DNA from: Monocercomonoides exilis PA203
Lineage: Eukaryota; Protista; Preaxostyla
Reading direction: 5' to 3'
Assembly: GCA_001643675.2 (NCBI GenBank)
Contig: LSRY02000006.1
Coordinates: forward strand, 1,426,001 to 1,490,000
DNA length: 64,000 nt
In this document: positions 36,379 to 52,400 of the stretch, in pieces
How positions within the stretch are numbered: position 1 is the stretch's first letter
How the letters are laid out: every line of letters begins with the position of its first letter
The notes under the pieces: model-generated
The model's database searches: none
Told to the model about the DNA's origin: nothing
What the model saw: the letters and a program-made list of their open reading frames with translations, nothing else
Translations under genes and position numbers: made by a program

Positions 36379-39300
36379 ATGTCAACAAACGTTTTAGTAT
36401 GATTTTCGTCTTTTTTCTGCACATGCAATTAAAAACAATAATTTTTACAAACTTTCTTGTTTTTAATTTTTATTAGACTCTTGATTTTGCAGTTGGGTAC
36501 AACAAAGACATTAAGAACGGAGTTTTATCGCTAATAACAGATTCAAGAAAAGTATTTTATATCTTCTATTTCTAACAATATATCACAATCTTTTTTGTGT
36601 TGTAGGCACTTGTATACGTTGCTGCCCATACGGCTGTGATATATGATATCGATACAGGCTCTCAGCAACTTCTTCAAGGACACGTTTGCATGTTATAATC
36701 GTTACAAAAGCTTAAATCCTTTATTTTTTGAATTTTCACAACAAATTTGGAAACAGTGCAATCCCATTTCATGTGTATGCGTAAGTAGAGATAGGAAATG
36801 GATTTTCACTGCAGATTCTGGTCCAGATTCGATGATAATTGTTTGGAATTCTGAATCTGGAGTTCCAGTCAAAAATATCTTTTCTCCACATCCCGAAGTT
36901 TGAAACACTTTTATGAATTGTGCTTTTATTTTATGAATTTTTATTTTGTTATTTAAAGGGTGTAATTGCCATGGACTTATCTCCTGATAGCACTACAATT
37001 GCAACGTTATCTGCCCCATATCCAATAGAGCAAACTTCAACAACTCCACTTCCTACTGCATCAACCCATTTTCCTCGAGACGCCTTCGATGCACAGGAGC
37101 TCAGCGGAATTGATGATGATATGGCCACTCTTCTTGCCCCCCAATCATCTTCATCATCTGCTCCTTTCAGGCAAGAAATTGCTTTATGGGATTGGATTGC
37201 AGATGATAGTGAACCTCGACCATCAGGACTGTCACAATGCCTTCTATGTTTGTCTCCTATATGCACAGGAGATGTTCAACATCACATAGTTTTTAACCCA
37301 ACAAACCCTGATGAGCTGTGCACAACTGGAAAGCGAAGAACAGTTTTCTGGAAAAAAGGAAAAAGAAGGCTTGTGAAGAAAGGCGGAAAAGAAGGAGATG
37401 AAGAACATGGAGATGACGAAGGAGCTGAAGACGAAGAGGAAGAAAATGGAAACAGAGGAAGAGATGAAGATGTTGATCCATTTCATAAACTACCTTGCAT
37501 CTTGCACTATCACTCACCAGCACTAAACACACGAGATCTCCATCAAGATGTGTCTTCATTCACAGCTTCTGCGTTCTTCCCATTCAGCGACCAGGCAGTG
37601 ACAGCAACAGACAACGGTGATTTTATTCTGTGGAGTTCGATGGATGGCAAGCGCGAAACAGACACATTTCTCGATGATTTGGACGATTCTCAAGATGAAA
37701 GCGACAACGAAGACGACGGCGATAGAACACAACGAGAGAAGAAAGGCGGAGAGTCAAAGCAACGCTTCCACATCGCAGCTCGCAAAGTGATGAAGATTTT
37801 GCGGTTGAATCCATCGTCTACATCATCACCGTGCCTTGTCACTCATCCACAGTTCTTTATAACTGGAGACGAAGACGGTAATGTGCGCTTCTTCGACTTC
37901 CAGTTCCGACTTTGTGGTTGGTTTGAGGATCTGAACTTAGGCCCGCTCTCTTCTCTATCACTGTCCGTTCCAGCTTCATTCGATTCCATTCACGATTTTG
38001 TTGCGTCAACTGTCAAGGATAGTGCAAGTTCCACTTCCACTTCGACATCTGCCTTAATTGCATCATCTTCTACATCTGTCGCGGGTGTAACTTCTGCTGG
38101 CATCGATCTGAATCCCCGCACTTCTGTTCTTCCAGATCTGATTGTTGGAACCACGCTTGGAAAAGTGTTACTCGTGAAAGGATCATCCTTTGCAGACGAC
38201 ACACATCTGCACAAAAAGTTTAATCTTCCTCTTGTTCCGTCGTTGGGTGATGGTGGTTCTGGAAAGGGAATGAGAGGTATGTCTGGAGGGAAAGGATCCA
38301 TGAAAGATGGAAGTGGTGCTGGAATGACTCAAAGAAAAGGGAAAGGAACAGGAAAGGAGAAAGACAATTCAAAGGAACCAGAAGGGGGGAAAGACAAAGA
38401 CAAAGAAAGAGATCGTCTCGTGCGCAGGCCAGTTGATCAGCATGGAAGAGGAGAGAAGCTGCTGGATGGGCAGTCAGGAAGCATTCTATGCGTAGCAATG
38501 CATCCGTTTTTGCCTTTGATAGCAATCGGGAACTCAGCTGGCGTTCTAACTTTGGTGATGTTCCAAAGCAAAGAAGAGTCGGACGAAAATGAAGAATCCG
38601 AACGATCACAGAGCAACTCTCACGATGTTCCTTTGCCACTTTTCCAGAATGGAAATCTTAAGAGAGAAATAATCGGAGAGAAGCAGTTTGAGAAGGCAGT
38701 TACCGCTGTTCAGTTTGATCCAACAGGGAAATATCTGGCAGTTGGATTCAAATCTGGGATGCTAAAGATGCTGATTGCTGATTACGGCAGCGGGAGCAAT
38801 GCAACATCAACGACTACTCCATCTGGAGCAGCTCTTTCTCAAATGGGAATTGCTTCTGCTCGTTCTGCAAGCTCGGCAAAACTCGACTCTGCCAATGGAT
38901 TTCCATCTGGTGTGAATGCGCCTGTGTATTCAGAACATTGGACATTTAAGAGCTGCAGCGATTCTGTTATGGAGATGAAGTTCAGTCCAGATGGTATGTT
39001 TATGGCGATGTATGATGCAGATCGATATGTTGTACTGTACAGGAAGAAGAAAGAAGGAGAAGAAGTGTCACCAGATGAGCTGCTTCTATCTGAAGATGGT
39101 GATTGGGTGACTGTTGGCAGAAACAGAGCACATCGCAAGGAGATAAGGGGAATCGAGTTTGGCATCTCCTCACAGCAACAGTATGTTCTGTTCACTATCG
39201 GATCTGACCGCAGACTTGTGCTGTTTGATGTGTATCATTCGTCTGTCTTAAATGGATTCAAGACTCTTTCTTCATTTACTATCGAGCAAACAGCTATTCC

Positions 39301-41002
39301 AACAGCCTGTCTTTTCTTGCAGTGTGGAAGACCTCTTCCTGAAGTACTTCTTCGTGTGTCTGCTCCAGCGGTCGGCAAAGGAGCAGCATTCACATCCACT
39401 GCAGCGATGATGATGAATCAAACCACTGGCGGTGGAATGGACACATATGCTCTGGGAGGCCCAATGCGCAGCTCAACATCAGATATTGGAAGGATGTCGA
39501 AAGGAGTGATGGGAGACACTCTTTCAGGAGGAGCACTGATGGGCACAACAACACAGTTTGGGCAGACGCTGAGCAGAACAGGAGGGACGGGTGGTGCTAA
39601 TGCAACTGGAGGAGGACCTGTTGCTCCACTCAATCCAGACTTCTTCAGATCGTCTGGAATTGCACGTGCATTTGGTTCCATTGGCCCAGGCGATGTTATT
39701 TTGATTGCAAATTCTGAGTTCAAATTCAAATTCCTTGATTTCCAGACGATGCAAGTTCGAAGGGTTGTGCAGGCTCCAATCTTTGGTCAAAATCCAGTCA
39801 ATCGTTTTATCACATTTCCGTCTGTTTTGCGAGAGTTCAACGAAGACGAGCTGAGTGCTTCACCTTTGGATGATGCTCCGAAAGAAGATGATAAGGATGC
39901 AGATCTCGAAGAAGATGACGAAGGCAAGTTGGACAGTCAAAGAGACGATGATTCTGCACGTGCCTCGTCTTCTCGTCGCGTGAAAATCGGAGGCATTGAA
40001 AATCGTGGAGAAAAGAAGCGACTTATTGATCTTTCTCGCCGGTATGTTGGATACACCACGAGTTCTCAGATGGTTGGTCTCATCAGACTTCCGTTGGATG
40101 GCAATCAATTGAATGGGATGGGTCTGATAGCACATCCTGGTGCAGTTATGGGAGCAGTGATAACACACAATGGCTCGCATCTACTGACAATTGGAGGTGA
40201 AGACTGCACTTTGTTTGGATGGAGCATTGATGTGAATGCAATGGAGACTTTATGCGCACTTCAGAACTCTTCTGTCACAGATCCTATTCTTGCACAGCTT
40301 GAAGGCGGACCTGGTGGCCCACTGCACAACGAGATCATCAACATGTTCTATTATGCACAGCTAAGATCTCAAGGTGAGGATGCCACAGTTGATCGTGCTA
40401 TTGAAGGAGCAGTACCTCTTTCGCAAGTACCAAACCTGCTTAGAGGCGTTGGTTTTTACCCCACCGAAAAGGAGATCAATGACGTCATTGCTGACTTAGA
40501 GTGGTCTGGCAGAGAGAAAGATGAAGCTGGGCAGGTTCCTACCTCTGTTGGACTTAGCGAATTTATTCGAGTGTTTGTTAATCACCGTCCGATAATGCCA
40601 CCCTCACAGGAGGATGTAGATGATGCATTCAAGAAGTTAGGTGCTGAGCCTCTGACTGGAGTTATTTCTAGAGACTCTTTGCTGAATCTCTTGATGACTA
40701 CAGGTTAGCTATTATTTTTTAACTTCTGTTTTGATTCATTTTTTCATTTTCCTCATTGTTTATTTCTTTCTCTCTTTTTATTTAATTTTCTTTCTTTCTC
40801 CTTTTTTTAATAATACAATTTTGAACAACCAGGAGAGCCAATACCTCCTGAGATGCTTGCTGAGTGCCTGAACATCCTCACCAAGAAGCCGATGACAGAG
40901 CTCAAAGAGAATCTCACATCACTCGATTTCTCCAGAGACATCCTTGGATTCAACGATGCTGACGAGCAGATGGAAGACGAAGAGCAGCCAAATGAAGGAT
41001 GA
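36379..41002 (+). CDS. CFAP251: Cilia- and flagella-associated protein 251 (WDR66): WD40 repeats plus C-terminal EF-hand-like region, 6 exons
   Basis: HTAVIYD...[86 protein letters not shown]. Confidence 0.93.
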
Positions 41003-41294: not shown

Positions 41295-42985
41295 CTACTT
41301 TCCTTCTTCAGCTTTTGCTTCCACTTTTGGCTGAGGCTTCGGTGGACGCTCTCCTTTCTTCTTTTCTTTCTTGACAGACACAGGCTTAGGTGGATGGAGG
41401 ATTAACATGACTTCCTGATGAAGTTTCTAAAGATATTCAAAAATGAAAAGAAGAAATTATTATTTAACAGCTACAATCTTTGATAAAGTGAATATTGAAT
41501 ACTTGTAATTCTTCCGAGGCATCTGGGCTGAAATGACGGCGAACTGGCTCAAGAAGGAAGTTTATTGCATCTGAGAAGAAAATCATTTGGTTATTAGAGT
41601 ATTGATTGCTTTAGTAAACTTTAAACATTAAGCACACCTGCAACTGATTCTTTCACAGCTCCCAAAGAAACACTTCCATCAGCCACAACTTCTTTTAATT
41701 CGCTCATTGTTTTCACATTTCTATGCAAATTTGATTGGAATACAAATTTTTTGAAGGAAAAATGAAAATATCGAAACGAATATTTCTATTAAAAACTTTT
41801 TTCAGAAGTAATGCTTCAAACTTTTCACCAATCTTGAATTCACCAATAATCGGAATAATGAGATTGAATATCAAATCAATAACACCGCTTGGTTCTTCCA
41901 AATCAGGTGCCAAAAACGCTTTCTTCATCTTCTTCTTTATCTCATCCTATAAAAAAGACAAATGAAAAAAAGTCTGATACCATCTCAATCTAATTAAATG
42001 CAGACTGTCGTTTCTTCTACAAAAATTGTTGATGCTGGAGTTTTCTTTGTCATAACTTCTTTCGGGTTTGACAATGAGAGAAGCATATCTGTGAAAGAAA
42101 AAACAATTTAATTTAAAAACATTGAAAATTTTAATGTTAATAACAGTTCGAAATAATATAATCAAACGTTGGTCGATGATGATAGGTTGCTTTATTCCTT
42201 TTTTCGTACAGTAAGTTTTTAATAGATCCGTTATTTGTTCTTGATCATGGCCAATTTGAATTACGTCAGCTAGGCGCTGAGATGGTGCAGATTCTGGTGA
42301 TGAAGCTGAAGCACTTGACGAACATGCGCAGTGAGTTTCTGTGAAGAACATGTTTGCACAGGATAAACAGGGAGACATAATATGAGAAGCCAAAAGCGAA
42401 TTCTCTTTTAAATTCTCCATTTGTTGAGAAACACTAACGTTGATGAAGAAAACAAAAAGATTGTCTTTTTTAAAAAATTAAAAAAAAGTTCAAACGTTTT
42501 CAATTTCACAGCTGTAAACACTTGGCTAAAGTCGATCATTTGCTCCCAGTAAATTGGATTTTTACCAACAGCTTCTTTCATCCAAACAATTTGAATATTT
42601 TCTCCAAAAGGAACTCCAAGTGCTTTCCAAACTTCAATGTAGTATTTTCCAATTGTTTGAATGGATTGAAGATTTCCAGTGTGTTTCTCTGATAAAAATG
42701 TCAAAAAATAAATTATTCGAAAATAAATAAGAACAGACTGTGCAAAAATGCAAGCCAATCTCCAATATAAAGGACTATTTTAAAGCCACATTGAACCAAA
42801 ATTTTCATGATATGAGCCTTTAAAATCGCCTGAGGAAGGCTCATGCTTCCATTTGGTTCAACAATATCATAAACAATTTTGCTATCCGAAGATGCTGCAA
42901 GTTCATCTAATTTAGATAATTCTGAAGATTCTTTAAATAACTCATGAAGATGTTCTGTTGCTGTCAGTGATGTGATAGCAGACAT
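41295..42985 (-). CDS. Tyrosyl-tRNA synthetase-like protein with degenerate catalytic motifs, 8 exons
   Basis: Collinear with plant/protist-type TyrRS: YDIVEPNG, DWLAFLHKKHTGNLQSIQTIGKYYIEVWKALG, YWEQMID, ADVIQIGHDQ, KKKMKKAF, LLEPVRRHF. Seven GT-AG introns keep the frame. Confidence 0.85.
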
Positions 42986-43160
42986 TTGATATTTCAATTT
43001 GTTTATGCAGGGTTAGATCGATCAAAAGCCTGACGCTGTTTTTTATCTTTTAATTTTTTGAAACATTGAATATATTGTCTTTTAAAAAGAATTTTCTGAA
43101 AAAATTGATTGATCAATTGACATAATATAAAGTTTTAAATAACACTTTTTTCTTTTGTTA

Positions 43161-45772
43161 ATGTCTATTGAAAAAGATGAACCAAAAGAAAAAGTTGTTT
43201 CATTTAAAATAAATGGCGGAGAAGTGGGTGCTGCTTCTTTTTTGGCACCAAAGATCGGTTTACTGGGATTGGTATGGATTATTTATTAATTATTGGTTTT
43301 ATTTTTTGCTCGCAAATTTTTAGAATTTTAAAAAGATAGGTGAAGATATTGCAAAAGCAACGCTTCCCTGGAAGGGTACACGAGTTACAGTTAATTTGAC
43401 GATTAGAGATAGAATAGTTGAGGTTTCTGTTGTTCCACCGGTTCAAGCTGTTTCTCCTCAAGATTTTGTTCGTAAATCGACTGCTGATATTTCAGTGAAG
43501 CAAGAAGCATCAAGTGATGATTTAGATTTCGACATGTTTAATTTAGACGCACCGGTTAGAACTTTTTTTTGGTTTCTTTTCAAAATTTTATAAATGATCT
43601 TTTTTTCATTTTAGGTTGACTTCAAGCCACAACTTCCTCAAAATTCGTCGCACGCACTTTCACTTCATAATCCATCTCCGTATCAATCAACCACGATTGA
43701 TGTTTGCGATGATGCTGACGGATATTATCTTTATAGAATTGGAGAAATTATAAATCATTATCAAGTTACAAAAATCCATGGGAAAGGGTCTTTTGGCATT
43801 GTGCTGCAAGCTCGAGATCTAAGGTCAAACGTTGATAACGAATATGTTGCAATAAAAATGGCAAAGAACAATGACATGATGTTTGTATTTATTTTTCACT
43901 AATGTATTTAATATTCAAAAAAACAATAATGAAAATTTTATAAATTATTTTTAATGATTATATAATTAATTATGTTTATAAACGATACTCAGGATACAAG
44001 TTGGCCTTCAAGAGGTGGCTGTTCTCCAAAAAGTTGGCGTTGGTGGCGGCTCAGACAGAAAAACAAGAATAGTACGTTTTATTGAGCATTTCTATCATAG
44101 AAATCATTTGTGTATCGTACTAGAAGACCTGTCGCTGACGCTTCGAGAGGTTTTGAGGCGTATGGGAGGCGACCGCGGGCTGTCGATAGCATCAGTGAGG
44201 GAGTACATACGTTGCTTGGCATTGGCCCTTTCACACACACATAGCAAGGGCTTTATACACGGCGATGTGAAGCCTGATAACATATTGACACGGCCAGCGA
44301 AAAGAAGTCAGACTCCGTTTCATTCAGTTCAAAGTGCTCAATCTTCTTCTTCTGTTTATTCAGCCACAAACCCAGGATTGACACAAGTGGAGTCAGGAAC
44401 TGAGATCTCGCTGTCTGCGTGTCTGTGTGATTTTGGCTCAGCTGTCTCTATCACAAAGGGGGCAGAGATCCGAGCGCCGTACCAGGCGTCTCGCTACTAT
44501 CGGTGTGTGGAAGCGATGCTGGGCTGTGTGATGACACAAAAGGCAGACATCTGGGCGATGGGGTGTGTGGCGTTTGAGCTGGCGACTGGGCGGGTTTTGT
44601 TTCCCGGGAAGACAAACAACGAGATGCTGAAGCTGATTCAGGAGGCGAAAGGGGTGCTGCCGAACAAGCTGAGGAGCGAAGGCGATGAGCAGCAGGTGAA
44701 CAGGCACTTTGACGAAACAGGGAAGTTCCTTGAGCATATCTTCGATCCCGTCACGCAGGCCAAGACCACAAAGACGATTGTCTATTCGCACCCGACGCTG
44801 CCAATCCGCAAGATGCTGTTTGATACCGTGTATCCTTCTCTTCTCTCTGCATCGTCTGGCGCGAGCGCCTCCGGCACAGCCAGCGCACCTACAAGAGAAG
44901 ACGAGCTGCTGCTGAGCGACCTGGCGTCGTTCATCGACGGCTGCCTGACGCTCAACCCGCACAAACGCATGACTGCAGAAGAGGCAGTGCACCACCCGTT
45001 TTTGAGCCAAAGCACAGCACAGCAGACGACTCAGCAGAAGACAGCGAAAAAGACGGCTTCTGGAACAGCATCTGCCTCTGCCTCTGCCTCTCGTCGTTCG
45101 TCCACTTCTTCATCTTCGACTTCAACTTCAACTTCAAATTCAAAAATGTCACCTTCACCGTCTCCTTCTCCTGCACCTACTCCTTCGTTTGTTCTCCCGC
45201 CTTATTCTTCGCCTTCTTCTTCATCTTCTGCTCCGCTTGCATCTTCCTCATTCTCTTCATCTTCAGCTCCTCAGAAAGGCAAAGGCAAAAGTGCATCGGG
45301 TTCTTCACAGAAGAAGGAAAGGGTGGTTGGGGCAGGGCTGCTGGACTACCTGGCCAAGCATCAGTCTGCGCTTGGCCCTTCGATATTTCCTTCTCCTTCG
45401 TCTTCTCCTTCTCCGTCTCCTTCTTCTTCATATTCGCCAGTTCCTTCTCAATCGCCTCAGTCTGTACTGTCGTCGCTTAGCCAACCTTCCGCTTCATTGA
45501 GCTCTTCGTCATACATTTTCGCTCCGCATTCATCTGCCTCTTCTTCTGTCATTTCGTCACTTCCGTTCACATTTCAGCATCCTTTCACTTCTTCCTCATC
45601 TTTTCCACCTTCTTCATACACCTCTTCAACTTCGTCTTTTACGGCTCAATCTTCTGCTTCTACTAACTCTTCCAGCCCTTCAGCATCTGTTTCACAGAAA
45701 GATGTCAAATCCGCAATCGCGGCGGCTATTGCTCGCGCACAGGCATTGAAGGCAGCTCAACAAAAAAAGTAA
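43161..45772 (+). CDS. PRP4 (PRPF4B)-family CMGC kinase with an N-terminal uL11/RPL12 N-terminal domain, 4 exons (43161-43271, 43324-43554, 43615-43880, 43993-45772)
   Basis: Exons 1-2 encode GGEVGAASFLAPKIGLLGL|NFKKIGEDIAKATLPWKGTRVTVNLTIRDRIVEVSVVP. Kinase part: DDADGYY..IGE, GKGSFG, VAIKMAKNNDMM, HFYHRNHLC, LREVL, HGDVKPDN, DFG, LFPGKTNNEML. Confidence 0.88.
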
Positions 45773-45998: not shown

Positions 45999-47784
45999 AT
46001 GTCCCTTCCTCACAATCATGATCATAACCACACAAATGATTCACATGCACACAGTAAGGGTGAATCTGGGCACGAAGTAGACGAACATGAAAAAAAGCGA
46101 GTGCCTTGGTAATATTTATTTATCCTTTTTTCGTCCTTATTCTGCTTTTTTCCTGATAATACGCTAAATTCAGGTATAAGGATGGGACATCCCTTCGCGT
46201 TTTAGCAGTTATTTTTTTAACAGGAATTTTCTTTTTGGTTGAATTGGTTGTTGGCATTATTACTCATTCAGTTGCCCTGTTATCGGATGCAGTTCATATG
46301 CTTTCTGATTTACTTTCGCAAATAATTGGATTTGCATTTGTTCAAGTTTGTTATCTTTGAAATTTCTTTTAAAGATTTCCACATCTTAGATATCATATAA
46401 AGATAAATCAAATAAAATGAGCTATGGATGGGCAAGATCAGAGGTTCTTGGGGGCTTAATTAACTCATCGCTGCTTATCATGATGGCAGGTCTAATATTG
46501 ATGGAAGCACTTCATAGATTTTTTGGAGATCCCGAAGTTAAGAATGTTGTGCTTTTGATGATTGTTGCAGCTTTGGGTCTTGTTGTGAACATCCTTGGCA
46601 TAGCAATAATGTCTTGTGGTGGAGAAGATGCTCATGCTCACCACCACCATCATCATGGACATAGTCATGGACATAGTCATACACACAGTCACGAAGAAGA
46701 AGAAGAGCATTCTCATTCACATGAGCACGATCATAATCATGATCATAATGCAGACAGTTCACCTGAAAATAGCGCTCAAGAACCATCTGCATCGTCCGCT
46801 GAAATGCCAATATCTGAACCACATTTTGAATCAGAAGCTCGTGCTGCACCAAAGAAAAAGAAAAAAATGGTTTGAAAGTCTAAAGCAATTAAGATAATTA
46901 ATTTACTTTTGCTACAGAACATGAACATCCAAGGAATGTTCTTGCATTTAATTGGAGATGCACTTGGATCAGTTGGAGTTTTGATAAGTGCGGCCATCAT
47001 TCAATGGGGAACATTTAGTTGGAGGTTTTATTTTGATCCTATCTGTTCGCTGCTTGTTTGTTTCCTCATCCTTCGTGGAGCAATTCCACTTGTCATTGAG
47101 ACTACTCGCATCCTTCTGTTGGCTACACCTTCTCATATTGATCAGTCGAAATTATTGAAGTCCATTAAATCTGTCTGCAATTTACCATTGTTTTTTTTCA
47201 ATTTTTTATTTTTATTTTTATTTTATTTTTATTTTATTTTTTCGATATAATGTTTACGTATATAGTGTCCTGGTGTTGCAGCTGTTCATAACTTGCACAT
47301 TTGGGAAATTATAAGCGGTAAAAATGTTGCATCTCTTCACCTTGTTGTGAAGTCTGGCTATGACTTTGTTACACTTGTTGGTTTGCTTTAATGCTTATTG
47401 AATTTAACTTTTAATTCTTTTTTTGTTTTGCATGTACTTTTTGTTAAATTTTTATCTTCTTTTTTTTTTAACGTGGGCTTAGTTAAAGTGAAGGAAATTC
47501 TACATAGATACGAAATACATTACAGCACTATACAACCCGAGTTTGAGCAGGAGGATGTGTGCTTTAATCAATTATCGATCGTTAAATATAAATGAGATTT
47601 TTTTTTTAAACATGAAAAATGAAATACAAAATTTTAGATCAACTGTGTTGTTTCATGCTCATCGAGAAATTGCAGCGAAGCAGATGACAGTTACTCTAAA
47701 GAAAAAGAAGAAAGTGTCATCCGCAAAAGAAATAGAAAGGCTCAAGAGAGAGAAATTGAAATGACATCAAAAGAGAGAGAATAG
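45999..47784 (+). CDS. Cation diffusion facilitator zinc transporter (ZnT1/COT1-like), 7 exons
   Basis: SVALLSDAVHMLSD; MSYGWARSEVLGGLIN; His-rich loop; NMNIQGMFLHLIGDALGSVGV; VHNLHIW; IHYSTIQPE. Confidence 0.93.
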
Positions 47785-48048: not shown

Positions 48049-49458
48049 GCATTTTCTTCTTTTGTGTGACTTTCAAAAACGCAAACACGATCCAAAAGAA
48101 GCACATAAAAAAACTTTCAGAACAAAGCAATCAAGCTGATTTAAAAAAAGAAATAACGAAAAACCCCTGCCTCTTCTCTCCTCCTCCTCCTCCTCCTCCT
48201 CCTCCTCCTCTTGCTCCAATCACCACCCACAAATCTCTCCCATTTGCACTCTCAGAAGGATTATCCCTCCAATTGACAAATCAAAAACCCACATTGCAGA
48301 CAAGACACACAGTCACAATAAACAGCGCTTCTAACAGCTTTCCTTGCACCCACACTGCAGACCTTCATTCATGCATTTCTCCCTGCCTCATCATCACAGC
48401 CTCAATTCCTCTCTTTCCTCTCTTTCCTCTCTCGCCCTTTTCCTCTCTCGCTCTTTTCATCCTCCATTTCTCCAGCCATCGCAATATTCACGATTCGCTC
48501 TCCTCCCAATTCCCTCAACTCACCCAGCTCCACCCATCATCTCGGCTTCCCCTTTCTCCTGACTCTTCCTGCTCCTCATCCTCAACATCGATCGCATCCG
48601 ACACAGTCATCACCACAGCCCCGCTCGGGAAACGCTGGATGAACTCTCGCTTCACAACAACAAGGCTCGGCCGGCTCTCCACTGCGCTGCTCCAGCACGC
48701 CACAACCACCCTCCCCAGCCCACACTCCTGCACCTCCCCAGCCTCTGGCCGTTCCTGCCCCCGCATCTTCTCAAACGCCGCCTCCCCACAATACTCAAAA
48801 AACGGAATCTCCAGCCGCAGGCACTCCCACAGCATCACCCCGATCGTGAACACAACCGACGCCTTCGTTGCGCCCACATTCCTCCCTGCCCCCAGCTCTG
48901 GCGCCCTCCACCGCAGACACTCCTTCCCCATGTCCAGCTCCTCCTCAAAAGCCGATGACGGTGGCGGCAATTTGGTGAACCGCTCACTCTTCACAGAAGC
49001 CTCAGAGGAAGATGTGACAATCGTGGAGGTCGAAGAGATGGATGACGAATCAGAAGACGAGTCATCAGAAGACGAGCAGTCTGAGTGGAGCGCAATGCAG
49101 ATCACCATGTGCTCTGAGAACAGCACAATGTGCGGGCTCAGACTGTCAAGCGATTGCAGTGGATTCTCCATCTCGTCAAACGAGTGCAGCGCCACATTTG
49201 CCACCCAGAACAGGATCTGGGCTGCTGTTTGCTCCCTCTCCTCCAAAGAGCCAATCGCCATCTCTTTCTTCTCGTTCCTTCCATGAAGCATCATGAACAG
49301 CGAGTCTCGCAGGTCAACAATCAGCTTCTCATGAGGAGACGAGCATGCCATTGCATCCACCAAGTTCGACATTGAAGAGGTTGTGGGGCACAAATCCTCC
49401 CCTCGAATAAATGTTGTGTCTGTATCTGAAGTATCTGTTGTTGAAGTGGAAGAGATAG
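48049..49458. repeat. Direct repeat copy B (see 3010-4410)
   Basis: Near-identical to copy A, including the non-coding 3' flank and (CCT)10. Confidence 0.95.
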
Positions 49459-52400
49459 ATGGTGATGGTGTTCTCTTTCTCGAAATATCGTCTTCTTCTT
49501 TCTCCAATGCCCATTCTGGAATCTTGTCTGAGTCTCTTCCAAGAATGTATTCAGTCGATCCACATTCACTCAACAAATGCTCTGAAGACTCAGAATGTTC
49601 CATATTCGTGTCATATATTCTCTTCTTCATCCTCTCATCGTTCTTCTTCTCTGCCTCTCTCTCTGCTCTCCTCCACTGCTTTTCAGGCGACATCTCCATC
49701 GTCACCATCTCAACTGCCTTCGGATCTTTTCTGATGTTATCATTCACAATCTCTCTCAATTCTTTGTTTTCATTCTTTGCCTTCCTCCATCGAACAATAA
49801 ATATGATCAATGTTATTAGAAGAATTGCCACAATCACAACGCAAACAATCAATAACCAATAAGATTTTCCTTCTTTCCTTCCTTCAACAATCCTTTCATC
49901 TCCTTTTCCAACACTTTCACTCCTGTTCTTCAGAATGAAAGAAACAGTCGATGAAGGAGAATCAATCTTTCCAAACAATATACAAGCACTCACTTCCACC
50001 TCATCTCCTGCGTTCTCTGTTGTTTCTTTTGGAATCATTCCATTCACTTCATTTATTGACAAATACCCTTCTTCGTGGAATCCATATCTTTCCACTGCCT
50101 CCTCTTCTCCCATCCGTTTCACAATCTTCAATGATATGTTGCAAGGAAGAAGCAGCTTCCCTTTGAACATCAGAAGCAGTTCTGCTCCAATATCTTCCAT
50201 CTCTATCCTTTCCAACTCTGGAATGAAGAATGATGATGCTCTCTCAGAAACAATCCCACCCAATTCGCATCCACCATTCAGAATCCACATTGATGAATTA
50301 TCCTTCAGTCCATCCCCTCCCTTCAAGCTCACAACATCCACCACCCCCGAATCCTTGCACAGCACGTTCCTCCGAAATGATGGATACTTTTCAAACCCAG
50401 GATCGTTCCCCACAAACTCTCCCTTTTCAATCTCAACTTTCCCTCCAGATACCCCCACCCCTCCTTCACTCGAGTTCGCAACCGTTGTCTCTCTCATCGT
50501 TGCATTGCTGTTTTCTATGCTGATCAATGATCCGTTCCACACGCAAATTTCTTGAGCATCGTTTGCTTGCAAATTCTCATTCCTCAGCTTCCCTTCAAAA
50601 TTGCATGAATCTGAAATAACATCTTTGCAATTTTTCATTATGAAAATGCTTCCTTTTTCACTACATAAAAAGCTACCACTAATTGAACAATTCAATAAAG
50701 ACACTTTATTTGAAAAGTCAATAGCTACTATTCCAGAAACTGTATTGGGAAAGGCGCTGACGTTTGAAAAGGTTGATGCAAATATCGTCAAATCTGTTTT
50801 CTCAAAATTCTCAGCAATTTCAAAAGAAGGAGAAAAAGCATTTATCACAAAGCAACTTTTCAAATTCACATTTTTCAAATCAAATTTTCGAATTTGAAAA
50901 CCAGTATTACAAGATGAAATCATGTCGTTTTGGATTGACACATTATCAATTGTCATTTCTTTGATGTCCACTGAACCTCCAGCAAAATCCATCAAATGCG
51001 AAGAAGAAATATTGCAGATTAATAAAATATCCATTTTGCATTTGCAATTTTGTTGTTGAATTAGTGTTGGAGTTTGTGCATAGACATCAGTTTCTATTGA
51101 CTGAAAAGAGCATTCGGTCAATAATAGAATTCCTTCTTTTATCATTATTGTATTTTTATGTAACGTTGGAAAGATCTCTTGGAACAAAAATTGTATGAAC
51201 TCAATAGATACAGTTCCTTCGCATGTGATGATTGAAGTTTTTTGTTCTTCAATTGTTGATAAAAACTTAAGAGATGCTTTTTCTCTTTTTCTTGATTTAA
51301 GTTCCATATCTCTTAACTCGACTTCTTTTCCAAGAACAGTTTTCTCATCAACAAGTAATCTACATTCAAAATCCGGAAAAATATGACGCAATCCATATTC
51401 AACACTAAAGCAAGGCTCCTCATAAGATCCGCATTGTCTGAAATCATTGCCTGGACGTGCAGTAGATCCTCTAACAATAATCGTTGATGACTGAAAAATA
51501 GTGATAAATTTCATTAAATCTGTATCTGATCGATGTTCTGTTGCATCAATCCCACTAAAAAGATGTTCTTGATTCATTCCTTCAAATTGAAATTGGAACT
51601 GAGTTTCGCTTATTTGAGTTTCTATGGAATAACACTGAACGTATACATTTCTACCAAACATTGCCAAGTTTCCATCAAAGATTTCTTTTGCAAACAAAAA
51701 GTTCAATTCACTTTTCAACTCCGAGTACAAATACAGACCTCCTCCTCTTCCAGTTGTGATATCGCAGCTGCATTGAATTATTGAACAATTGTGGAAATGC
51801 ATGAATCCATCTTCAATCAATTTCACTTTTGTCATTCCACCTTTTAATGAAGAAGTTGACTGACACAATGAAAAACTTGTTTTGTTAACAATCAACTCAG
51901 TCGCAAAAAAATCTGATACATCTTGCTCAATAATTGATCCTCCTTCGCTCTCTCGGCTTACTGATTGAAAATTGCTTTCTGTCATTTCAAACAGAAATAT
52001 CGAATTCTTTTCTAGTTCTTTTGAATATCTTTTCCATTGAATTATACATCCTTCTATTATCTTTATTGACTGAAGGACAAAAGTTTATATTTTCGCTTCA
52101 GCTTCACCAATGAAAAGCATAGAGCGTTTTAATTTTACATCTTTCACAGATATTCGTTTCATTTCTATTTGCCCCTTCTCAACTTCCACTAATGAGTAAT
52201 CATTCTCTTCAGCTTCTGTTCCCTTAGTTTCAAATGATAGATCAGAAATTACAAGTTTTCCATCCTTGTTGATAATGATTGAACGTATTTCATTTGTGAA
52301 TTTTTCTGAAACAATAATATTCAACCATTCCAAATGCAACAATTGACTGTTCCATATATATGGATTTCTAGCATTTCCACCTTCGTTAAAAAATGTTAAA

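What the first reader, a model, noticed from the sequence alone, without database searches (positions are those of the whole stretch)
43161..45772. Ribosomal protein uL11/RPL12 N-terminal domain fused in-frame to a PRP4 splicing kinase
The ORF track hides this because the domain is split by a 52-nt intron (43272-43323). After splicing, residues 1 to about 75 read MSIEKDEPKEKVVSFKINGGEVGAASFLAPKIGLLGL|NFKKIGEDIAKATLPWKGTRVTVNLTIRDRIVEVSVVP. This aligns without gaps and with the same residue numbering to eukaryotic RPL12 (…[57 protein letters not shown], recalled). The uL11 rRNA-binding C-terminal domain is absent. The frame instead continues through a linker (DDLDFDMF) into a PRP4K catalytic domain with intact K, HGD and DFG motifs. 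Canonical PRP4K has an RS/KR-rich N-terminus, so here it seems replaced by the uL11 domain that contacts translational GTPases at the stalk base. The RPL12 S38-P39 phosphosite is changed to N-F. Inference: a chimeric kinase that may be targeted to GTPases (eEF2, or its spliceosomal paralogue Snu114) or to pre-60S particles. I know of no described RPL12-PRP4K fusion, but could not search.
Basis: partly seen in the sequence, partly recalled or inferred. Interest (0 to 1): 0.88.

Follow-up and report, generated by a model that had tools for sequence, protein, structure and literature searches.

The report
Splicing kinase carrying ribosomal uL11 domain
In the gut flagellate Monocercomonoides exilis, the only intact copy of the splicing kinase PRP4K starts with a folded domain copied from ribosomal protein uL11 (RPL12) that selection has kept in shape, a pairing I found in no other protein or paper, but what the domain binds is untested.

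Summary
Confirmed at DNA level. Window 43161-45772 is M. exilis MONOS_5110 (795 aa, XP_067733937.1). Four exons match the public model. Pfam L11_N scores 53.6 bits (cut-off 32.9). The kinase groups with PRP4K and is the genome's only intact one; three normal RPL12 genes lie elsewhere. The join lies inside exon 2, in frame with a conserved PRP4K motif, so it is not two genes merged across an intron. A shared phase-0 intron shows DNA-level duplication. The domain is under purifying selection (dN 0.29, dS 1.8-2.4; changes avoid invariant columns, p=0.0003). Best reading: a spliceosomal PRP4K with a tethered docking module, partner unknown (Snu114 a candidate). The scan's notes on other DNA of this genome show no such fusion.

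The parts
43161..43271 (+). Exon 1, residues 1-37: altered N-terminal tail (MPPK motif lost), strand 1 and helix 1 of the uL11 N-terminal domain
   Evidence: Pfam L11_N 2-25; matches P0001
43272..43323 (+). Intron 1, 52 nt, phase 0 after codon 37; same position as intron 1 of the three RPL12 genes
43324..43437 (+). 5' part of exon 2, residues 38-75: helix 2 and strands 2-3 of the uL11 N-terminal domain
   Evidence: Pfam L11_N 26-56; PDB RPL12 E 8e-11; folded in model
43438..43554 (+). 3' part of exon 2: fusion point (about 43438-43445), then linker with the PRP4K acidic D-M-F motif; M108 at 43534 is the only other in-frame ATG before the kinase domain
   Evidence: DNA identity to RPL12 ends here; motif aligns with PRP4K family; Met list
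43555..43614 (+). Intron 2, 60 nt, phase 0, holds an in-frame stop; Blattamonas PRP4K has a phase-0 intron just after the same motif
43615..43880 (+). Exon 3: rest of the disordered linker, DDADGYY box, kinase N-lobe with Gly loop and K195
   Evidence: best PDB hit PRP4K
43881..43992 (+). Intron 3, 112 nt, phase 2 inside a Met codon; same position and phase as in Blattamonas PRP4K
43993..45019 (+). Exon 4, kinase part: helix C, catalytic loop, about 36-residue insert, DFG, activation loop with Y366, APE read as CVE, C-lobe
45020..45772 (+). Exon 4, Ser-rich tail (250 aa, 36% Ser) with a short basic-then-hydrophobic motif also seen in the Blattamonas tail; stop at 45770-45772
   Evidence: weak, low complexity

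Best explanation
A DNA-level partial duplication copied exon 1, intron 1 and the first half of exon 2 of an RPL12 gene onto the first exon of the single PRP4K gene, after the split from Blattamonas (or it was lost there). The product is one 795-aa protein: an independently folding uL11 N-terminal domain, about 65 disordered residues, an intact PRP4K catalytic domain and a Ser-rich tail. The kinase most likely still does the PRP4K job on the tri-snRNP/pre-B spliceosome (phosphorylating PRP6 and PRP31). The uL11 domain works as a tethered docking module through its helix-1/helix-2 face, not as a ribosome subunit. Shown: architecture, origin, orthology, selection. Inferred: expression as one protein, splicing role, docking role. 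Guess: the partner is spliceosomal, with the eEF2 paralogue Snu114 first and snRNA second.
For: Junction is inside one exon, in frame, no stop. Sister to Blattamonas PRP4K 100/99 inside the PRP4K clade 98/99; other intact hits are DYRK-type or more distant; model matches human PRP4K, TM 0.95 by target. Other copies examined are decayed fragments. PRP6, PRP31 and Snu114 families are in the genome. Selection: identity by codon position 0.72/0.78/0.43; dN 0.29 vs dS 1.8-2.4; 6 of 23 changes at invariant columns, Fisher p 2.7e-4; none of 4000 neutral simulations at equal DNA identity kept 45 residues. All 7 charged residues in 19-50 are kept and the charge count (11 basic, 6 acidic) equals RPL12. 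The copied piece matches the NMR-defined domain 10-73, and helix 1 is the factor-contacting part (PMC9122527).
Against: One species only. Blattamonas PRP4K exists without the domain, so it is not needed for the basic job. In human pre-B structures PRP4K sits on PRP6-HAT, U4/U6 stem II and SF3B3 (PMC11208138); the passages I read name no Snu114 contact. GPLG reads GLLG. Helix conservation could reflect folding alone or an earlier life as a full RPL12 paralogue. APE reads CVE, unique among 268 PRP4K sequences, so activity or specificity may have shifted.
Confidence: 0.5

Rival explanations
1. Constrained passenger: the insertion supplied the start codon and 5' end of an essential gene; the domain is kept only because a misfolded N-terminus would get the kinase degraded. 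It binds nothing.
For: Blattamonas needs no such domain. 23 of 68 residues changed, including six otherwise invariant ones. Both ribosome-anchoring parts are lost.
Against: Surface charges are kept and no indel arose over a synonymous distance near saturation; M108 offers an easy way to drop the domain, and the neighbouring linker shows no such constraint.
Confidence: 0.2
2. Retargeting to translation: the domain binds eEF2, EFL1 or another translational GTPase, or pre-60S particles, and the kinase phosphorylates them.
For: Helix 1 contacts eEF2 on the ribosome and G33/G36 matter for translation (PMC9122527); both glycines are kept. The kinase branch is long (1.04) and APE is altered.
Against: The rRNA-binding CTD and uL10-binding motif are lost; the factor contact is described in ribosome context. 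This is the only intact PRP4K in an intron-rich genome (31,693 introns, PMC6759080) that keeps PRP6 and PRP31.
Confidence: 0.12
3. The domain is an import or localisation tag: RPL12 enters nuclei through importin 11, and the oxymonad kinase, lacking the basic RS region, borrowed that route.
For: Importin-11 route for RPL12 is the title of ref. 89 in PMC8623629 (paper itself not held). The basic surface is kept; the RS region is absent.
Against: I could not check which part of RPL12 binds importin 11, nor whether this genome has it. Blattamonas manages without; basic clusters exist in the tail.
Confidence: 0.08
4. Not one protein: the kinase is made from M108 on a shorter transcript, and the uL11 part is a separate short product or a remnant of a diverged RPL12 paralogue that joined recently.
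For: No reads inspected. M108 is in frame. Retention of intron 2 would give a short uL11-only product ending at 43593. Selection could predate the join.
Against: Only about 170 nt separate this ATG from the head-to-head neighbour; one exon holds both parts; the tag MONOS_5110 carries no fused/split mark in EukProt and the same sequence stands in the Nanopore-era record (PMC8767320); no poly(A)-like motif lies between domain and kinase start.
Confidence: 0.1

Closest known systems
PRP4K / PRPF4B (CMGC, DYRK group; human 4IFC, 6QX9 chain K)
   Same: Orthologous kinase domain, DDADGYY box, non-RD catalytic loop, activation-loop Tyr, GKTNNEML motif; fold TM 0.95 by target.
   Different: No RS/KR-rich N-terminus; uL11 domain instead at the front; 36-residue insert before DFG; APE reads CVE; 250-aa Ser-rich tail.
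Blattamonas nauphoetae PRP4K (KAK2964216.1)
   Same: Closest relative (291 bits); two shared intron positions; short RS-free N-terminus; Ser/Pro tail.
   Different: No uL11 domain, and only 188 nt to the upstream gene, so none can be hidden; normal APE; no insert.
Eukaryotic uL11/RPL12 (Pfam PF03946 + PF00298), three intact genes in this genome
   Same: Residues 9-76 gap-free, 45/68 identical, shared intron, shared lineage residues E10, N38, E70, V77.
   Different: No C-terminal rRNA-binding domain, no MPPKFDP motif, P34L and P39F.
Database records of RPL12 merged with a neighbour (SEC23, homeobox-START, Nudix)
   Same: Long proteins with L11_N.
   Different: They nearly all hold full RPL12 with both domains and look like annotation merges; none has a kinase.

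Membership tests
PRP4K | Kinase domain groups with PRP4K, not DYRK/CLK | tested here: met
   Tree 98/99; best PDB and Foldseek hits are PRP4K
PRP4K | Catalytic residues K, helix-C E, HxD-K-xx-N, DFG, activation Tyr | tested here: met
   K195, E210, 292-299, 349-351, Y366
PRP4K | APE motif | tested here: inconclusive
   Reads CVE; Glu kept, Pro lost; 1 of 268
PRP4K | RS/KR-rich N-terminal region (typical of animal, plant, oomycete forms) | tested here: not met
   0 RS/SR dipeptides in 146 residues; also 0 in Blattamonas
PRP4K | Phosphorylates PRP6/PRP31 on the tri-snRNP | not testable with these tools
   Substrate families present; activity untested
uL11 N-terminal domain (PF03946) | Pfam score over cut-off and two-helix, three-strand fold | tested here: met
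   53.6 bits vs 32.9; E11-19 H29-33 H39-49 E57-65 E68-74 in the model, which was guided by an RPL12 alignment
Ribosomal protein uL11/RPL12 | C-terminal rRNA-binding domain PF00298 | tested here: not met
   No match at this locus
Ribosomal protein uL11/RPL12 | N-terminal MPPKFDP motif and GPLG motif | tested here: not met
   Motif lost; GPLG reads GLLG with both Gly kept
Expressed fusion gene | Transcript joining exons 1-2 to exons 3-4 | not tested

The most novel reading that the evidence does not exclude
The uL11 domain still recognises an eEF2-fold GTPase and now docks the splicing kinase on Snu114 (or lets it sample both Snu114 and eEF2/EFL1), re-using a ribosome-factor interface inside the spliceosome.
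Probability: 0.15. Interest if true: 0.85.

Novelty: new variant of a known kind. Interest (0 to 1): 0.57.

Why it matters
The uL11 N-terminal domain is practically confined to the ribosome; here it has been lifted out at its natural boundaries and kept under selection on an essential splicing kinase. That is a natural test of what the domain can bind without rRNA, and of what the poorly understood PRP4K N-terminus must supply, with Blattamonas as a ready control that lacks both the RS region and the domain. If the partner is Snu114 it would be a direct structural link between ribosome and spliceosome GTPase interfaces. The limits: one species so far, and no function shown.

Tried and rejected
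Single-sequence folding failed (pLDDT 33); the block alignment worked. Two length-windowed searches for long proteins with L11_N gave no second kinase fusion; the exhaustive 50%-cluster search gave only Blattamonas as a close relative; no Streblomastix or Paratrimastix sequence surfaced, so their state is unknown. The metagenome scan gave one unrelated PRP4K and one unrelated kinase locus. The second 'PRP4K' on C30 is a decayed fragment. I tested whether the scattered copies are retrocopies that keep exons 1-3, which would prove a joined transcript: they do not, homology starts near 44053. ESM Atlas listed no cluster with both families. Paper searches for Monocercomonoides+PRP4 and PRP4 kinase+RPL12 gave 0 papers; a supplement lists MONOS_5110 as a PRP4 homologue with only a kinase domain noted. 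The sigma-70 scan is irrelevant for a eukaryote.

Full report
Identity of the locus. The window is G000:C58:1426001-1490000 of an 82.3-Mb, 101-contig assembly, which fits Monocercomonoides exilis PA203 (PMC8767320). A search with exon 4 returned a 100% identical record, P0001, 795 aa, with Pfam kinase and L11_N marks: KAH7830080.1, XP_067733937.1, MONOS_5110. Its name mentions only the kinase. Inside scripts only, I placed exon 1 and the start of exon 2 side by side for codon counts.

Observation. Each of the four exons translates to its part of P0001, and the three introns are GT-AG and AT-rich. Exon 1 matches Pfam L11_N positions 2-25 and exon 2 positions 26-56; the whole protein scores 53.6 bits against a cut-off of 32.9. 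The C-terminal uL11 domain is found at three other places, not here. Those are three intact RPL12 genes on C50, C57 and C42, identical in protein over the part compared. So the ribosome does not depend on this gene.

The join is not a gene-calling merge. DNA identity to RPL12 stops near codon 75-77, in the middle of exon 2. The same exon and frame run on to the acidic D-M-F motif that is in the PRP4K consensus upstream of the kinase domain. Blattamonas PRP4K has a phase-0 intron just after that motif and a phase-2 intron in the same Met codon as intron 3. Exon 2 is thus a hybrid: RPL12 in front, ancestral PRP4K exon 1 behind. Intron 1 sits at codon 37, phase 0, as in all three RPL12 genes, so the piece was copied as DNA, not through mRNA. 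Four residues are shared only with the organism's own RPL12 among 12 compared (E10, N38, E70, V77), and at I42, T63 and S72 the fusion keeps the general state while the RPL12s changed: an old duplication within the lineage. The same sequence is in EukProt under a plain MONOS tag and in the record of the Nanopore assembly; the authors marked fused and split models in their tags and polished models with Nanopore cDNA (PMC8767320). That two assemblies agree is my inference from the record formats.

The kinase. It is sister to Blattamonas KAK2964216.1 (100/99) inside a PRP4K clade (98/99); the other intact M. exilis hits tested carry DYRK-type motifs or lie further out. The many stronger-looking hits in the genome are fragments of exon 4; those I examined carry stops and frameshifts. 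It is therefore the only intact PRP4K found. Catalytic residues are in place, and the model matches human PRP4K with TM 0.95 by target. Two oddities: an insert of about 36 residues before DFG, and APE read as CVE, alone among 268 sequences. PRP6, PRP31 and Snu114 families are present.

Selection on the domain. Against the RPL12 genes, residues 9-76 are 45/68 identical at 130-132/204 nt, with dN about 0.29 and dS 1.8-2.4 (NG86, near saturation, so rough). Identity by codon position is 0.72/0.78/0.43. The decayed kinase copies, an internal control, give about 0.77/0.75/0.66 and 1-3 stops or frameshifts per 204 nt although they are closer in DNA. Only 6 of 23 changes fall on columns invariant in 12 RPL12s (Fisher p 2.7e-4); neutral simulation to the same DNA identity gives 26 residues on average, never 45 in 4000 runs. 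Caveat: some of this constraint could date from before the join.

Which surface is kept. The copied piece matches the independently folding domain 10-73 defined by NMR (PMC9122527), and the model shows that fold, a disordered stretch 83-139 and the kinase (guided by the alignment, so not proof). Residues 19-50 have 4 changes in 32, the strands 19 in 36 (p 7e-4), all seven charged residues of 19-50 are kept, and the charge count is unchanged. RPL12s show a similar split, so this fits a kept binding face but does not prove one. Helix 1 is the face that touches eEF2; G33 and G36 are kept, P34 is L. The MPPKFDP motif that binds uL10 is lost, as is the rRNA-binding domain (PMC9122527 for both roles).

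N38 is the normal state in this organism. Blattamonas PRP4K has neither the RS region nor the uL11 domain, with 188 nt to its upstream gene, so the simplest order is loss of the RS region first and gain of the domain later.

Mechanism. Most likely (0.5) the protein acts as the cell's PRP4K at tri-snRNP integration, as described for the human enzyme (PMC11208138, PMC4615201), with the uL11 domain as an added docking module on a long tether. Snu114 is the most attractive partner because it is an eEF2 paralogue in the U5 particle with which PRP4K purifies (paralogy from my own knowledge), but the passages I read place PRP4K on PRP6, U4/U6 stem II and SF3B3. Rivals: folded passenger (0.2), retargeting to translation factors or pre-60S (0.12), separate products (0.1), import tag (0.08).

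Novelty. No second L11_N-plus-kinase protein appeared among long proteins of 220-1390 aa (word-based, so distant kin can be missed), in the 50%-cluster library or in the Atlas. No paper in the searchable library links the two. It is a new variant of a known kinase, seen in one species.

Limits. No transcript was inspected. Streblomastix and free-living relatives were not reached. I took no contig for human.

Noticed in passing
window 44052-45100; copies on over 20 contigs of G000, e.g. L018, L037-L044: About 35 decayed copies (64-75% identity) of a fragment of PRP4K exon 4, most starting at 44052-44062. Three share a unit of about 5.4 kb at 82-88% identity, with inverted repeats near one end: looks like a gene fragment captured and spread by a non-autonomous mobile element.
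   Followed up: partly
window 44504-44512: The kinase APE motif reads CVE, the only such case among 268 PRP4K sequences; a 36-residue Ser-rich insert precedes DFG.
   Followed up: partly
L019, L020, L021: All three ordinary RPL12 genes have Asn at position 38, where the other eukaryotes compared have Ser: this organism lacks the RPL12 S38-P39 phosphosite altogether.
   Followed up: partly
L022:8001-9676: Blattamonas PRP4K has a very short N-terminus with no RS region and a Ser/Pro tail with a short motif shared with M. exilis: oxymonad PRP4K seems rebuilt at both ends.
   Followed up: partly
window 41295-42988, minus strand: Head-to-head neighbour about 170 nt upstream; resembles tyrosyl-tRNA synthetase by eye and was noted as a dead paralogue by the scan; single ORF pieces gave no Pfam hit.
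   Followed up: no
G000:C7:806511 and C5:1234412: Two Snu114/EFTUD2-type matches of near-equal score: possibly a duplicated gene.
   Followed up: no
window 46000-47600; 36920-40708; 48515-51985: Neighbours: a His-rich cation-efflux (zinc) transporter, a WD40/EML-type protein, and a membrane protein with a degenerate kinase tail.
   Followed up: no
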